Source: Convolutriloba macropyga (lineage: Eukaryota). Taken from it: a stretch of DNA of 64,000 bases. The DNA is taken from assembly GCF_964194025.1 (NCBI RefSeq), contig NC_134475.1, positions 55,366,001 through 55,430,000 on the forward strand, given 5' to 3'. Of the stretch, positions 30,655 to 52,784 are shown piece by piece. Each line of letters opens with the position of its first letter. The first letter of the stretch is position 1. A model generated the notes under the pieces. That model ran no database searches, was not told where the DNA came from, and worked only from the letters and a program-made list of their open reading frames with translations. The position numbers and the translations under genes are program-made.

Positions 30655-30824
30655 ATGTTCAAGTTAATGACGGACGAGTTAGTGAGGACCCTGTGCAGCG
30701 ACAGAAACACTCTGGGTCTGGGTCAGTGTGTCATCCCGGCTGCTTCAATCCACGAAGCTGCCTTTGTCAAACTGGGCACTTTTGTCATCAAACGACAGCC
30801 TTCCTATCCGTGGCAGGCTGCTAG
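30655..30824 (+). CDS. Gasdermin-like gene A, coding exon 1 (GSDME/pejvakin-type N-terminus)
   Basis: MFKLMTDELVRTL..GLGQCVIPAASIHEAAFVKLGTFVIKRQPSYPWQAA parallels GSDME MFAKATRNFLREV..GDLIAVSNLNDSDKLQLLSLVTKKKRFWCWQRPKY. Donor AG|GTTCGT is phase 2 and at the same position as in paralogue B. Confidence 0.85.
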
Positions 30825-31197
30825 GTTCGTTATTTATCAAGAAAAGGGCAAAAACCTGCGACAAATATCAGATCAAAATTCTTGTTTTGAGGACAAAGTG
30901 AGGTCTGAATAAATTTCTGAACTTCTGAGCTAAAAAAGATTGAACGATCGCAGAATAAATTATGCAGTGAATACAACCCCTAGGGATAAAGTCCTCAAAA
31001 CTTAAACCCTCATTATGTATTAAACAGGGCTGTTAAACAGTTGAGGGCTTATTGACAGTTATTTGAAGTACCTTTCCTGCTTTGGCCCCCAGCTTTTGTA
31101 TAGTCTGATATATATTTGCAATAAGGGCAATAAAACATGGGGGGACAGAATAGATCCGATTTATAATCCGGACCTAGCTGGGAGTGACTTTTTTCAG

Positions 31198-31333
31198 TTA
31201 TGAGTACTTAGCACCTCTGGGCGTTAAACTGAAGAAATCCAAACATTTTGAGCACACGACAGTTCTGTGCGACAGCTACAAAGCCATGGACATGCAAACT
31301 AGCGTCTCAGTCAACGTTGCCACTCTGCAGTTT
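31198..31333 (+). CDS. Gasdermin-like gene A, exon 2
   Basis: Acceptor TTTTTTCAG|, donor |GTGAGT. 136 nt, phase 2 to 0, in frame with exon 1: (S)YEYLAPLGVKLKKSKHFEHTTVLCDSYKAMDMQTSVSVNVATLQF. Completes the W-Q-x-x-x-Y motif. Confidence 0.85.
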
Positions 31334-31399
31334 GTGAGTACAAAAATATAAATAATATTGTTCCCATCGCCGAGACACAAGACAATTACAAAGAAAGAG

Positions 31400-34300
31400 A
31401 CGGTTTAATCAGAGTTCTTTCGGTCTGGGATGGTCTGATCAGAAGTCATTTCGGTCTAAAAATATTTGCTCAGAGCAGACAGCTTGATCAGAGGTCATTG
31501 CAATCTAGGATTTTCTGTTCAGAGAAGATGGCCTGATCAGAGGTCATTTCGGTCTGAGATTGTTTGTTCAAAGCAGACAGTTTGATCAGAGGTTATTTCA
31601 ATCTGGGATGGTCTGATCAGAGCAGATGTTCTGATCAAAGGTATTTTGACTCTGGGATTGTCTGATCAGAGCAGACGACTTGATCAGATGTCTTTTCGGT
31701 CTGAGATTGTCTGATCAGAGCAGGCGATGTGATGAGAGGTCATTTTGATCTGGGATTGGTTGCTCAGAGCAGACAGTTTGATCAGAGGTTAATTCAATCT
31801 GAAATTGTCTGATAAGAGCAAATGGTCTGATCAGGGGTCATTTTGGTCTCGGGTTGTCTGATCAGAGTAGACGGTCTGATCACAGGTCATCGCGGTCGAT
31901 TATTAGTTCATAGCAGATATTTTGATCAGAGGTTATCTCAATCTGGGATTGTCTGATCGGTACAGATGGTCTTACCACAGGCCATTTCAGTCTCGTATTG
32001 TCTGATCAAAGTGGACGGTCTGATCAGAGTTCGTTTCCATCTGAGAGTTTTTGATCAGAGCAGACGGTTTGATGAGAGGTCGATTAAATTTGGGATTGTC
32101 TGATCAAAACAGACGGTGTAATCAGATGTTACATCGGTCTGAGATTGTCTGACCAACGCAGATGGTCTGATCAGAGGTCATTACAGTCTGGGATTGTCTG
32201 ATGAGAGTAGACGGTCCGATCACAGGTCTTTTCCAACTGAAGTTTTTGATCAGAGCATGCGGTCTGATCAGAAATCATTTGGGTCTAGGATTTTTTGATC
32301 AGAGCAGAGGTCTTGATCAGAGGTCATTTCGATCAGGGATTGTCTGATAAAAATAGACGGATTGATCAGATTTTAATTCGCTATGAGATTTTCTGATCAG
32401 AGCAGACGATCTTATCAGAGGTCAGTTTTATCTGCTCTGTTTGATCAGAGCAGACGGTCTGATCAGAAGTCAATTTGATCTGAGATTAATTGTTCAGATC
32501 AGACAGTATGATCAGAGGTCATTTCAGTATGGTATTGTCTGTTCAGAGCAGATGGTCGGAGCAAAATTCAATTTGGTCTGAGATTTTTCACTCTGAGTAT
32601 ACAATTTGAACAGAGGGTTTTTCGATCTTGGATTCTCTGATCAGAGTAGACGGTCGGATCAAAGGTCTTTTTGGTCGGAGCTTGGTTGATCAGAGCAGAC
32701 AGTCTGATCAGAGGTCGTTTCAATCTGAGATTATTTGTTCAGAGCAGACAATTTGATCAGAGACCATTTCGGTCTGAGATTTTATGTTGAGAGCAGAGAA
32801 TTTCGTCAGATCTCATTACAGTCTGGGATTGTCTGATGAGAGTAGACGGTCTGATCAGAGCTCTTTTTCCATCTGAAATTCTTTGATCAGAGCAGGCGGT
32901 TTGATCGGAAGTCATTTGGGTCTGGGAATTTTTGATCAGATCAGAGGGTTCGATCAGAGGTCATTTCGATCAGGGATTGTCTCATGAAAACAGACTGATT
33001 GATCAGATTATAATTCGAGTTGAGATTCTCTGATTAGAGCAGACAGTTTGATCAGAGGTCACTTCAATCAGGGGTTGTCTGATCAGAGCAGACGGTTCAA
33101 TCGCTGGACATTTTGACCTGAGATTGTTTGATCAGACCAGACGGTTTGATCAGATGTCACTTCGGTTTGGGGTTGTCTGATCAAAGTACACGGTTTGATC
33201 AGAGGTCATTTCGATCTTGTATTGTCCGATCAGAGTAGACCGTCTGATCAAAGGTCACTTCGGTCTGCGGTGATTTGACCGCAGCAGACAGTTTGTTCAG
33301 AGGTTATTTCAACCTGAGACTTTTTGATCAGATCAGACGGTTTAATGAGAGGTTGATTTGATCTGAGATTGTTTAATAAAAACAGAGAGTTTGATCAGAG
33401 GTTGATTCAATATGGGATTGTCTGATCAAAGCAGACGGTGTAATCAAGTGTTAAATCGGTCTGAGATTTTCTGATCAGAGCCGAGGGTTTGATCAGAGGT
33501 CATTTCGATCAGGGATTGTCTGATAAAAATAGACGGATTGATCAGATTTTAATTCGCTCTGAGATTTTCTGATCAGAGCAGACGATCTTATCAGAGGTCA
33601 GTTTTATCTGCTCTGTTTGATCAGAGCAGACGGTCTGATCAGAAGTCAATTTGATCTGAGATTAATTGTTCAGAGCAGACAGTATGATCAGAGGTCATTT
33701 CAGTATGGTATTGTCTGTTCAGAGCAGATGGTCGGAGCAAAATTCAATTTGGTCTGAGATTTTTCACTCTGAGTATACGATTTGAACAGAGGGTTTTTCG
33801 ATCTTGGATTCTCTGATCAGAGTAGACGGTCGGATCAAAGGTATTTTTGGTCGGAGCTTGGTTGATCAGAGCAGACGGTCTGATCAGAGGTCGTTTCAAT
33901 CTGAGATTATTTGTTCAGAGCAGACAATTTGATCAGAGACCATTTCGGTCTGAGATTTTATGTTGAGAGCAGAGAATTTCGTCAGATCTCATTACAGTCT
34001 GGGATTGTGTGATGAGAGTAGACGGTCTGATCAGAGCTCTTTTTCCATCTGAAATTCTTTGATCAGAGCAGGCGGTTTGATCGGAAGTCATTTGGGTCTG
34101 GGAATTTTTGATCAGATCAGAGGGTTCGATCAGAGGTCATTTCGATCAGGGATTGTCTCATGAAAACAGACTGATTGATCAGATTATAATTCGAGTTGAG
34201 ATTCTCTGATCAGAGCAGACAGTTTGATCAGAGGTCACTTCAATCAGGGGTTGTCTGATTAGAGAAGACGGTTCGATCGCTGGACATTTTGACCTGAGAT

Positions 34301-51323: not shown

Positions 51324-51440
51324 TTGTTTAGAGCAAAGTTTGGAAAGGGCGGATTGACCAAAGGAAACGTTGACATGTTCGACAACAGTTCTCAAGCTCA
51401 AAGTTGTTGTAGTATCGTCTCTTGTGTGTTGTCTACACTT
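51324..51440 (+). CDS. Gasdermin-like gene A, candidate internal exon (acceptor at 51323 or 51331)
   Basis: GC-richer open stretch with TAG acceptors and donor |GTATGT (phase 0). TKGNVDMFDNSSQAQSCCSIVSCVLSTL aligns ungapped by eye to GSDME TMQKCVISEHMQVEEKCGGIVGIQTKTV. It cannot be joined directly to the long form of exon 3. Confidence 0.5.
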
Positions 51441-52295
51441 GTATGTTGTGTATATGAAAAACTGAAATTATCAATTAATGAAGTAATGAAAGCAGTTAAA
51501 TTTGATTAATAGGACCAAGAGAACATGAAAAATGGAACCTAAGCAGTTGTGTTTCAAAACATTGTTCTCGCAACAATTAATCAAGCAATCTTATTGTTTT
51601 GCTAAATCAATTAATCAAGCAATCTTATGAAGTTTTGCTATGAATGCAAAAGAAGCAGTCAAATTAATTGAGCACCCATTCCTTTCTTCCATAAAAAATC
51701 AAGCATCTCAAACAAGATCAAAACCAGTAAATAACGCCAAGTCTTTTTCATTTCTGACCAAGTGTTAGTCCAAATCATTGTCATTAATAATTCGTCCACT
51801 GAATAGTGTCACATTTTCGATTGTCCCACTTGGGACCATTCTAATTCTACAATAGTCAGAATTGGGTCAATTCTGGTTTTACATGGGGGTATGAGACAAC
51901 TGATACCAGAAAATAAGTGGTTTTTCATAGACTCAACTCAATTTTTAATTGAGAATATCGCATTTCACCCTATCATTAATTGCGGTTATGTTACAGATTT
52001 TTTGCTCCTAAATAAGAACCTCGTCACGGCCTAAAAGCATTCGAAATGTAACGCTGCTAATTGGAAAAACTGCTAATTTATGATAATATATAATCTTTCT
52101 GTCGAAGCACATTTCAAAGTCCGTTTTTTGCTAGCCTTTAGATCATTGAGGCCACGTTATATTCAAAAATACTGCAATAAGCTTTCACTTAATCACTCCT
52201 AATTTGAATTCATATACTAAAAAACTGTTGCCTAAAATGTTCGAATTTACTATACTAAAGTTTAAACAAAAAAAAATATAGAATGATTTTTGAAG

Positions 52296-52543
52296 GTTGA
52301 GGTCCAATGGCGGAAGCCAGTACGTCCAGACCATCTCAGACAGAAAGTGTCTATGCCCAGACCGTCCAAGACGGAAAGATCTTATTTCCAGACTTTTGTG
52401 CCTTCACCAGACTTTCACGTGTTCATATCCAGACGTTCGTGCGTTTTTCGATGTTTCCAGACTATGTAATTTTGAACACACGACGCCTCCCTCGTGCGTT
52501 TTTCTTCTGTGTGGACATGCTTGCTTCCGTCTGGAGCCTCAAA
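52296..52543. mobile_element. Small MITE-like element in an intron of gene A
   Basis: TTGAGG-TCCA..GGCGGAAGCCAGTACGTCCA is inverted as TGGACATGCTTGCTTCCGTCTGGAGCCTCAA; internal CCAGAC repeats; no clear TSD. Confidence 0.55.
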
Positions 52544-52587
52544 CTGGAAACTATTGACCTTTAAGCATATGTACCGTTTTTGTTTAG

Positions 52588-52784
52588 GTCATAAGGAGTC
52601 TGAGAAAACTGACAAGAGTTTCAGAATGGTGAAGGGACAAGTGATGGCTTACTGCATTCAAGATTGCAAATTCATTCCTGCAAACAACACATTCAGTTTA
52701 CCATTGTCAGCCTCAGACGACGAAGATCCAGAAACAGAGAAGAAAAAAGATATAAAAAATGACCAAACAGATCTACCCCTTTAA
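52588..52784 (+). CDS. Gasdermin-like gene A, terminal coding exon (alternative acceptor gives a start at 52566)
   Basis: Acceptor TTTTTGTTTAG|. GHKESEKTDKSFRMVKGQVMAYCIQDCKF resembles GSDME GNVTKDSNVVLEIPAATTIAYGVIELYV. An acidic tail and TAA follow, with no strong donor before the stop. Confidence 0.72.

What the first reader, a model, noticed from the sequence alone, without database searches (positions are those of the whole stretch)
30655..52784. Hidden gasdermin gene predicted to encode only the pore-forming domain
Seen: small exons scattered over 22 kb. Exons 1-3 splice in frame at canonical sites and give the gasdermin motif series MF..T..LV / IP.AS..E..F..L..V.KR....WQ...Y / G.V.K.ELD. 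A later exon supplies G.VMAY and stops about 43 codons further on. Established: animal gasdermins (GSDMA-E) normally carry a helical C-terminal domain that is removed by proteolysis. Known exceptions are the pore-domain-only Trichoplax gasdermin (activated by disulfide reduction), Neurospora RCD-1 (activated by hetero-assembly), and bacterial and fungal HET-Q1-type gasdermins with short inhibitory tails. Inference: a ~270-aa gasdermin without a CTD that must be restrained non-canonically. Caveat: one ~25-30 aa exon is unlocated and the junction phases around 51324-52588 are unresolved.
Basis: partly seen in the sequence, partly recalled or inferred. Interest (0 to 1): 0.92.

Follow-up and report, generated by a model that had tools for sequence, protein, structure and literature searches.

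The report
Acoel gasdermin lacking the inhibitory domain
This is a real, transcribed gene of the acoel worm Convolutriloba macropyga, one of a tandem array of short gasdermin-like proteins that have only the pore-forming domain. One of its exons is missing from the assembly, so its full reading frame cannot be read here.

Summary
The window is Convolutriloba macropyga (Acoela) contig C8:55366001-55430000. The finding is RefSeq LOC142344199, an "uncharacterized protein" annotated only as truncated 134- and 160-aa products.

Confirmed:
- Exon 1 is 30655-30824, exon 2 is 31198-31333, exon 3 is 44677-44774 and the terminal exon is 52588-52784. All are open, with canonical splice sites.
- A 1048-nt transcript contig proves the exon 2/exon 3 junction. 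It also shows that the exon 3 donor splices on to an exon starting Y-RVPEAVATA, which matches exon 4 of the paralogues.

Not confirmed:
- That next exon is absent from the assembled window.
- The missing part is about 60 aa, not 25-30.

Family evidence:
- At least nine paralogues lie on C8 at 55.39-55.87 Mb. Complete RefSeq models are 255-258 aa.
- One paralogue passes Pfam Gasdermin (26.2 bits) and another scores 24.4.
- The family profile hits only GSDME-NT in the PDB (E 4e-6). The AlphaFold model matches GSDME (Z 15.1) and Trichoplax gasdermin (Z 14.3).
- All members stop 7-27 residues after the last strand, and no C-terminal domain was found.

How the protein is restrained is untested. The loop cysteines of Trichoplax gasdermin are absent. 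This is a new member of a known kind, from a phylum where I found no paper reporting gasdermins.

The parts
30655..30824 (+). Exon 1 coding part (ATG; 56 codons plus 2 bases). It encodes helix alpha1 and the beta1-beta2 loop motif GTFVIKRQPSYPWQ. Donor AG|GTTCGT.
   Evidence: Sequence. Same junction as RefSeq isoform X2, P0020. 56-69% identical to the exon 1 of seven paralogues on the same contig and 38% to one on contig C2.
30825..30904 (+). Alternative in-frame extension of exon 1 used by RefSeq isoform X1 (donor GTGAG|GTCTGA). It adds 26 residues that no homologue has.
   Evidence: P0010 compared with P0020. It appears as an insertion relative to the family profile.
31198..31333 (+). Exon 2 (1 base plus 45 codons): YEYLAPLGVKL...NVATLQF. 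Donor TTT|GTGAGT.
   Evidence: The last 30 bases of exon 2 (31304-31333) are the loose end immediately before exon 3 in the transcript contig. Homologous to paralogue exon 2.
31432..44113 (.). Satellite array with a 49-nt unit that fills most of intron 2.
   Evidence: Tandem Repeats Finder. GC skew plateau at 32-44 kb.
44677..44774 (+). Exon 3 (32 codons plus 2 bases): LGLSGSSTDKYSLECHLGKVSKMELDENDIKN. Donor CTA|GTTAGT.
   Evidence: The 1048-nt contig of run X7 lies on 44250-45570 only at 44677-44774, with no mismatch and a loose end on both sides.
45071..48412 (+). LTR element inserted in intron 3. Its two LTRs are 100% identical. It carries gag with a CCHC knuckle but no RT or integrase.
   Evidence: It is high-copy in DNA run X1 and transcribed in X7.
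50346..50545 (.). Assembly gap. This is the likeliest site of the missing exon 4 (about 50 codons) and possibly of a micro-exon. It was not filled or looked up.
   Evidence: The transcript continues after exon 3 with TCGTGTACCTGAAGCAGTGGCGACTGCGTT (Y-RVPEAVATA). That string has no match in the window at up to 3 mismatches. The exon-4 profile finds nothing in 44700-52700.
52588..52784 (+). Terminal coding exon (2 bases plus 64 codons plus TAA): HKESEKTDKSFRMVKGQVMAYCIQDCKFIPANNTFSLP followed by a 26-residue acidic/basic tail.
   Evidence: Same acceptor phase as the paralogues' terminal exon. Matches family profile positions 195-246 at E 2.6e-16. It is the only 100% copy in the genome.
52911..52916 (+). 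AATAAA polyadenylation signal, 127 nt after the stop codon.
   Evidence: Sequence. Fits the 551 nt of the transcript contig that lie beyond exon 3.
58358..58522 (+). Exon 1 of the next paralogue in the tandem array. It bounds this gene on the 3' side.
   Evidence: 69% identical to exon 1 of this gene.

Best explanation
The locus is LOC142344199 of the acoel Convolutriloba macropyga. It is a transcribed member of an acoel-specific, tandemly expanded family of single-domain gasdermins.

Shown: exons 1-3 and a terminal exon are intact. Exon 3 is spliced on to a fourth, family-typical exon that the assembly lacks.

Inferred:
- The missing exon lies in the gap at 50346-50545, and the RefSeq 134/160-aa products are an artefact of that gap.
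- The full product is about 254-267 aa: a GSDME-like pore-forming domain (alpha1 helix, basic/aromatic beta1-beta2 loop, two extension hairpins) ending in a short, unconserved, charged tail with no C-terminal repressor domain.
- It makes membrane pores without proteolytic removal of a repressor domain.
- It is held in check in some other way, either by self- or paralogue association that hides the lipid-binding face, or by restricting where and when it is made. I rank a cleaved inhibitory tail and Trichoplax-type loop disulfides as less likely.
For: Organism and gene:
- Cluster look-ups name the species and the RefSeq loci.

Splicing:
- The transcript contig of run X7 gives the exon 2/exon 3 junction.
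- It also shows exon 3 joined to Y-RVPEAVATA, against Y-SVPYAVVEE in the paralogues.
- The contig has 551 nt beyond exon 3. That is enough for exon 4, a micro-exon, the 197-nt terminal exon and a 3'UTR of about 150 nt up to the AATAAA signal.

Family:
- At least nine exon-1 copies and matching terminal exons lie on C8 at 55.39-55.87 Mb.

Gasdermin identity:
- Pfam Gasdermin scores 26.2 bits (P0018) and 24.4 bits (P0013).
- The family profile hits only GSDME-NT among PDB sequences, E 4e-6, aligned over 26-219 against 19-227.
- The AlphaFold2 model has pTM 0.66. Its top 32 Foldseek hits are all gasdermins.
- VIA Z-scores are 15.1 for GSDME and 14.3 for Trichoplax gasdermin (rmsd 3.0 over 183 residues).

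No C-terminal domain:
- Complete models of 238-259 aa from three sources end 7-27 residues after FSLP.
- The genome scan for Gasdermin_C was empty.
- Nothing resembling coding sequence lies in 52785-58357.

Constraint:
- dN/dS is 0.15 between paralogues B and C and about 0.22 between this gene and C.

Mechanism hints:
- The tails share no sequence and lack large hydrophobic residues.
- The beta1-beta2 loop has no cysteine in any member. That loop is where Trichoplax gasdermin forms its disulfides (PMC12547243).
Against: - The full reading frame cannot be read, because about 60 residues are missing from the assembly.
- Both RefSeq isoforms stop at the TAG straight after exon 3.
- The link between exons 1-3 and the terminal exon at 52588 rests on position, phase and contig-length arithmetic, not on a read. 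The two parts lie on opposite sides of a scaffold gap.
- Run X7 is labelled 'DNA?' and I take it as RNA only from its exon-limited, spliced contigs.
- Synonymous divergence is saturated (dS 1.2-1.9), so recent decay of this copy is not excluded.
- Pore formation, lipid binding and any mode of restraint are untested.
- The second hairpin of the paralogues is rich in charged and small residues.
- The homodimer prediction gave no verdict.
Confidence: 0.62

Rival explanations
1. This copy is a decaying paralogue. It yields only the 134/160-aa N-terminal fragments annotated by RefSeq, and the exon at 52588-52784 is an orphan relic. The half-domain product could not form a pore.
For: Both RefSeq isoforms end at the TAG after exon 3. 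Exon 4 is absent from the assembled sequence. A very young LTR element lies 300 nt downstream of exon 3 on the same strand. Joining exon 3 directly to the terminal exon would give TAG.
Against: The transcript contig uses the exon 3 donor and continues in frame into an exon-4-like sequence, with 551 nt beyond exon 3. The terminal exon is open, keeps its splice phase and keeps the family motifs. dN/dS is about 0.22.
Confidence: 0.12
2. The scaffold joins two different gene copies at the gap. Exons 1-3 on the left and the terminal exon on the right would then belong to different genes. The true 3' end of this gene would be unknown and could in principle differ.
For: The gap length is only an estimate, and at least one exon is missing there. 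In LOC142344202, 5' cassettes and the terminal exon lie tens of kb apart and two cassettes share one terminal exon, so adjacency alone is weak evidence.
Against: Order, strand and spacing match the array's pattern of a cassette, then a terminal exon, then the next exon 1. Both parts are single exact copies in the genome. Every complete family member ends in the same kind of terminal exon.
Confidence: 0.1
3. The family keeps the gasdermin fold but no longer forms pores, so no restraint is needed. It would then have some other role, as is discussed for some gasdermin relatives.
For: Sequence identity to GSDME is only 12-16%. The predicted second hairpin region (for example SKDQAGASASKGSTGAEADSKEKKNTNK in P0013) is charged and low in complexity. 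The model's pLDDT is below 50 over both hairpins. Constitutive expression of an unrestrained pore-former would be lethal.
Against: The basic/aromatic beta1-beta2 loop (KKFPFWFWQ, compared with KKKRFWCWQ in GSDME) and the alpha1 helix are conserved. Low confidence over the hairpins is what one expects of an inactive gasdermin. Purifying selection acts across the whole domain.
Confidence: 0.16

Closest known systems
Trichoplax adhaerens gasdermin (TrichoGSDM, 250 aa; PDB 8JYV, 8JYW)
   Same: An animal gasdermin consisting of a single pore-forming domain of about 250 aa with no C-terminal domain. Structurally it is among the best matches (Z 14.3, rmsd 3.0 over 183 residues for the inactive crystal form).
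   Different: TrichoGSDM is locked as a dimer by disulfides between cysteines in the beta1-beta2 loop (PMC12547243). The acoel proteins have no cysteine in that loop. The acoel family profile does not reach TrichoGSDM in sequence at E <= 1. The acoel family is a bilaterian tandem array, not a single gene.
GSDME / DFNA5 N-terminal domain (Pfam PF04598; PDB 9H5M, 9PE0)
   Same: The closest relative by sequence. It is the only PDB family hit by the profile (E 4e-6), and the alignment runs end to end. It is also the top fold match (Z 15.1). It shares the KK..FW.WQ loop and the G.L.K.E.D and IAY motifs.
   Different: GSDME carries a C-terminal repressor domain of about 220 aa and a caspase-3 site in the linker. 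The acoel proteins stop 7-27 residues after the last strand and have no conserved DxxD motif.
Neurospora RCD-1-1 / RCD-1-2
   Same: Gasdermin-N-only proteins whose activity depends on pairing two diverged variants. The acoel locus offers many diverged variants side by side.
   Different: The fold match is much weaker (Z 6.9-7.5). RCD-1 lacks the N-terminal helix that the acoel proteins have. The RCD-1 variants are alleles, not tandem paralogues. Hetero-assembly was not tested here.
Bacterial gasdermins and fungal HET-Q1 (short inhibitory tail plus a neighbouring protease)
   Same: Similar length, with a short tail after the pore-forming domain. The nearest clusters by language-model features include Bact_GSDM (a lead only).
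   Different: Their tails are 17-67 residues long, pack onto the core and are cut by an adjacent protease (PMC13475620). The acoel tails are 7-27 residues, unconserved and without large hydrophobic residues. An ORF survey of the 64-kb window showed no protease gene, though only the LTR-element ORFs were scanned against Pfam. Fold Z is only 6.4-8.6.

Membership tests
Gasdermin pore-forming domain (Pfam PF04598) | Score at or above Pfam's gathering threshold (25 bits) | tested here: inconclusive
   This gene's single exons and its RefSeq products give no hit. Paralogue P0018 passes at 26.2 bits and P0013 scores 24.4 bits. P0019, P0011 and P0012 give no hit. This gene's pieces match the family profile at E 6e-51 and 2.6e-16, so membership is by transitive homology.
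Gasdermin pore-forming domain (Pfam PF04598) | Gasdermin-N fold | tested here: met
   Tested on paralogue P0013. The AlphaFold2 model has pTM 0.66. The top 32 Foldseek hits in the PDB are all gasdermins, best E 1.3e-8. VIA Z is 11-15 for eukaryotic gasdermins. This gene itself could not be folded because exon 4 is missing.
Gasdermin pore-forming domain (Pfam PF04598) | Forms membrane pores | not testable with these tools
   This needs liposome or cell assays.
Canonical two-domain animal gasdermin (GSDMA-E) | C-terminal repressor domain (Pfam PF17708) after a cleavable linker | tested here: not met
   The PF17708 scan of the whole genome found nothing, but its sensitivity is low and the controls were silent. 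Complete family models and an mRNA-like contig stop 7-27 residues after FSLP. The stop is at 52782-52784, AATAAA lies 127 nt later, and the next paralogue begins 5.6 kb downstream with no coding matches in between.
TrichoGSDM-type redox-locked gasdermin | Single pore-forming domain of about 250 aa | tested here: met
   Family members are 238-259 aa. This gene is estimated at 254-267 aa.
TrichoGSDM-type redox-locked gasdermin | Cysteines in the beta1-beta2 loop that form intermolecular disulfides | tested here: not met
   The loop is IKRQPSYPWQAAS in this gene and KKFPFWFWQS and similar in the paralogues, with no cysteine in any member. The only family-wide cysteine is Cys14 in helix alpha1.
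RCD-1-type hetero-assembling gasdermin | Two variants that are inactive alone and active together | not tested
   Many diverged paralogues exist, but no pairing test was run. The single complex job (a P0013 homodimer) gave no verdict.
bGSDM / HET-Q1-type gasdermin with inhibitory tail | Conserved inhibitory C-terminal peptide of 17-67 residues and an adjacent protease gene | tested here: not met
   The tails are 7-27 residues, not alignable between members, and charged. No protease-like ORF was noticed in the window, from an ORF survey only.

The most novel reading that the evidence does not exclude
Acoels have built a combinatorial system of gasdermins that lack the repressor domain. It would consist of a tandem array of diverged pore-domain cassettes, some spliced alternatively onto a shared terminal exon. 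Its members would be inactive alone and form pores only in particular paralogue or isoform combinations, or after a trigger acting on the conserved Cys14. That would be a bilaterian mode of gasdermin control that uses neither cleavage nor the Trichoplax loop disulfides.
Probability: 0.2. Interest if true: 0.85.

Novelty: new member of a known kind. Interest (0 to 1): 0.6.

Why it matters
Among animals, the only gasdermin without a repressor domain described in the papers I read is the Trichoplax protein (PMC13475620, PMC12547243). Full-text searches found no paper linking gasdermins to Xenacoelomorpha and only an unrelated one mentioning acoels.

An expanded, expressed family under purifying selection in acoels would show that the single-domain form persists in Bilateria. 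It also lacks the one animal locking device so far described for such proteins. That gives a concrete way to ask how an animal cell keeps a ready-made pore-former silent.

Practically, the RefSeq products of this gene are probably truncated by an assembly gap. The complete paralogues (LOC142344204, LOC142344202) are the better material for experiments.

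Tried and rejected
- Pfam and PDB searches with single exons gave nothing. An exon-1 profile gave only weak GSDME hits (E 0.17).
- Whole-genome six-frame scans with PF04598 and PF17708 were uninformative.
It shows no similarity to any family member. Entered at the acceptor at 51323 in the phase left by exon 3, it runs into a stop. 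Entered at the second AG, it starts with TAA.
- The tblastx match between 49535-49645 and a paralogue intron contains stops and has no splice sites, so it is rejected as an exon.
- Matches at 56315-56516 look like retroelement debris shared with another intergenic region, not gasdermin.
- No run on record as RNA holds the gene. X1-X6 hold the intron as well, so they are DNA.
- Searches for more relatives returned only Convolutriloba proteins, ORF fragments and the one metagenomic contig. The Symsagittifera proteins came from the exon-1 profile search.
- Homodimer prediction for P0013 gave no verdict, because the fold was uncertain without the alignment. It counts neither for nor against.
- Atlas feature search: the nearest clusters are bacterial hypothetical proteins, some carrying Bact_GSDM, and PJVK. 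This is a lead only.
- dN/dS between this gene and paralogue B could not be computed because dS is saturated.

Full report
**What the window is.** The window is G000:C8:55366001-55430000 of a 1.18-Gb genome. Exact look-ups of proteins found with the locus name the organism as Convolutriloba macropyga (Acoela, Xenacoelomorpha). The gene is RefSeq LOC142344199, an "uncharacterized protein".

**The observation.**
- Exon 1 starts at the ATG at 30655 and ends at 30824 (AG|GTTCGT). Exon 2 is 31198-31333. Exon 3 is 44677-44774 and ends with two bases of a codon (CTA|GTTAGT).
- Spliced together they read ...PWQAAS-YEYLAPLGV...ATLQF-LGLSGSS...MELDENDIKN. This equals RefSeq isoform X2 (P0020, 134 aa).
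- RefSeq isoform X1 (P0010, 160 aa) uses a second in-frame donor at 30904. That adds 26 residues which are an insertion relative to every homologue.
- The terminal exon is 52588-52784. It begins with two bases of a split codon and reads HKESEKTDKSFRMVKGQVMAYCIQDCKFIPANNTFSLP plus a 26-residue charged tail. It stops at TAA 52782-52784, and AATAAA follows at 52911-52916.
- Intron 2 holds a 12.7-kb satellite with a 49-nt unit. Intron 3 holds an LTR element with two identical LTRs.

**Transcript evidence.**
- No public run on record as RNA holds the gene. Runs X1-X6 hold the intron too, so they are DNA.
- Run X7 (2016, 159 million letters, labelled 'DNA?') held 0.41 of the words of exon 1-intron-exon 2, which is about the exonic share.
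- Laid on 44250-45570, its 1048-nt contig lies only on 44677-44774, without a mismatch.
- The letters before that piece are the last 30 bases of exon 2 (31304-31333). The letters after it are TCGTGTACCTGAAGCAGTGGCGACTGCGTT.
- In the phase left by exon 3 this reads TA|T CGT GTA CCT GAA GCA GTG GCG ACT GCG, that is Y-RVPEAVATA. The paralogues read Y-SVPYAVVEE at the start of exon 4 and other family members read F-NVPVAVANQ or Y-SVPTAVAHE.
- So the exon 2/exon 3 junction and the exon 3 donor are proven, and the mRNA goes on into a family-typical exon 4.
- The contig has 551 nt beyond exon 3. That is enough for exon 4 (about 150 nt), a micro-exon, the 197-nt terminal exon and a UTR of about 150 nt.

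**The missing exon and the gap.**
- The 30 letters after exon 3 occur nowhere in the window, even with 3 mismatches.
- A profile of exon 4 from seven family members, run at full sensitivity on all stop-to-stop frames of 44700-52700 on both strands, gives at best 4.2 bits. A paralogue that was not used to build it scores 56.9 bits.
- This gene's pieces cover family profile positions 1-134 and 195-246 of 258, so about 60 residues are unlocated.
- The only unread letters between exon 3 and the terminal exon are the gap at 50346-50545, which makes it the probable site.
- The gap also means that exons 1-3 and the terminal exon are not proven to be one gene. Joining exon 3 directly to the terminal exon would give TAG.
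- The RefSeq products stop at the TAG that follows exon 3 when its donor is read through. Given the transcript, that is most simply an artefact of the gap.

**The family.**
- Exon 1 has at least nine copies on C8 between 55.39 and 55.87 Mb, all on the same strand, with matching exons 2-4 and terminal exons. A few more lie on contig C2 and small scaffolds.
- The next exon 1 lies at window 58358, which leaves 5.6 kb for any further exon of this gene. Nothing there looks coding apart from retroelement debris.
- Reading paralogue C base by base gives exon 4 with a GC donor, a 13-nt micro-exon (GAAGCGGAAGCAG) that restores the frame, and a terminal exon with its stop.
- Complete RefSeq models are P0013 (LOC142344204, 256 aa) and P0018 and P0019 (LOC142344202 isoforms, 258 and 255 aa).
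- Relatives outside the genome are two Symsagittifera roscoffensis proteins (P0011 of 238 aa, complete; P0004 of 197 aa) and a 259-aa ORF on a 1186-nt intron-free contig from a JGI sample, with a stop codon and 280 nt beyond it.
- A profile of exon 1 run over 1.84 billion representative proteins found only these.

**Is it a gasdermin?**
- Pfam Gasdermin scores 26.2 bits for P0018 (cut-off 25). P0013 scores 24.4 bits over residues 20-237 against profile positions 13-236 of 240. P0004 and P0006 give weaker hits in the correct register.
- The family profile against all PDB sequences hits only GSDME N-terminal chains (E 4e-6, aligned over 26-219 against 19-227).
- AlphaFold2 on P0013 with a 20-row family alignment gave pLDDT 67.7 and pTM 0.66. 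The low-confidence stretches fall at the two extension hairpins.
- The top 32 Foldseek matches in the PDB are all gasdermins (GSDME 1.3e-8, Trichoplax pore 8.5e-7).
- VIA-align gives Z 15.1 for GSDME and 14.3 for Trichoplax gasdermin (rmsd 3.0 over 183 residues for the inactive crystal form). Other eukaryotic gasdermins score 11-13, bacterial ones 6.4-8.6 and RCD-1 6.9-7.5.
- The basic/aromatic beta1-beta2 loop of GSDME (KKKRFWCWQ) is kept as KKFPFWFWQ in the paralogues and as KRQPSYPWQ in this gene.

**Is there a C-terminal domain?**
- Every complete member ends 7-27 residues after the conserved F(S/T)LP that follows the last strand. The tails cannot be aligned with one another, are charged and lack large hydrophobic residues.
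- A genome scan with Gasdermin_C was empty, although that scan has low power.
By position, phase and motif it probably holds for this gene too.

**How it may work.**
- Shown: gasdermin-N fold, no repressor domain, expression, and purifying selection (dN/dS 0.15 between two paralogues and about 0.22 for this gene against one of them, with saturated dS).
- Inferred: pore formation without cleavage.
- A bacterial or HET-Q1-type inhibitory tail is unlikely, because the tails are so short and unconserved and no protease gene was seen in the window.
- The Trichoplax device, disulfides between cysteines of the beta1-beta2 loop (PMC12547243), is not available because that loop has no cysteine. The only family-wide cysteine is Cys14 in helix alpha1.
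- What remains is masking of the lipid-binding face by self- or paralogue association, or control by cell type and timing. A homodimer prediction gave no verdict.

**Novelty.**
- Full-text searches found no paper linking gasdermins with Xenacoelomorpha and only an unrelated one mentioning acoels.
- A survey of 34 phyla does not mention Xenacoelomorpha (PMC9355259).
- Gasdermins that consist only of the pore-forming domain are known from Trichoplax and Neurospora (PMC13475620). I therefore file this as a new member of a known kind, from a new phylum, in an unusual tandem array.
- The scan's notes hold the same stretch twice. One entry is this finding and the other reads the two in-window paralogues as a pair. 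The pair is in fact part of a larger array.

Noticed in passing
G000:C8:55548522-55607886 (outside the window; proteins P0018, P0019): LOC142344202 has two alternative 5' cassettes, each with its own exons 1-4 and about 32 kb apart. Both are spliced to one shared terminal exon, so one locus gives two different pore domains with the same C-terminal strand and tail.
   Followed up: partly
window 31432-44113: A satellite array of about 12.7 kb with a 49-nt unit and higher-order periods of roughly 413-1570 nt fills intron 2. It has strong GC skew (0.25).
   Followed up: partly
window 45071-48412: An LTR element lies in intron 3 on the gene's strand. Its LTRs are 100% identical over at least 300 nt. 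It carries gag with a CCHC knuckle but no RT or integrase. The LTR is high-copy in DNA run X1 (depth about 2800-13000 against 27 for unique sequence) and is present in X7 transcripts. An extra copy of the 38 nt that precede the 3' LTR, followed by the first 58 nt of the LTR, sits at 45573-45668.
   Followed up: partly
window 58358-64000: Exon 1 of the next gasdermin paralogue lies at 58358-58522 (69% identical). It is followed by a different satellite at about 59300-63800. The remaining exons of that gene appear to lie up to 84 kb away (C8:55453976, 55475827, 55507906).
   Followed up: partly
G000:C8:56105425-56112033: Four tandem copies of an exon-4-like segment (74-84% identical to P0013 residues 134-185) are spaced about 2.2 kb apart, 230 kb beyond the array. 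No other gasdermin exons were found near them.
   Followed up: no
window 30825-30904: RefSeq isoform X1 uses a second in-frame donor that inserts 26 residues into the beta1-beta2 region. No homologue has these residues, so this may be a minor or spurious isoform.
   Followed up: partly
window about 16760-17010: A second run of N (assembly gap) lies upstream of the gene and is not related to the finding.
   Followed up: no
L034:975-1184 (minus strand): The 1186-nt JGI contig that carries the 259-aa homologue also holds the 3' end of a convergent gene, 70 nt after the stop codon. This suggests either overlapping 3' UTRs or a compact genome in the source organism.
   Followed up: no
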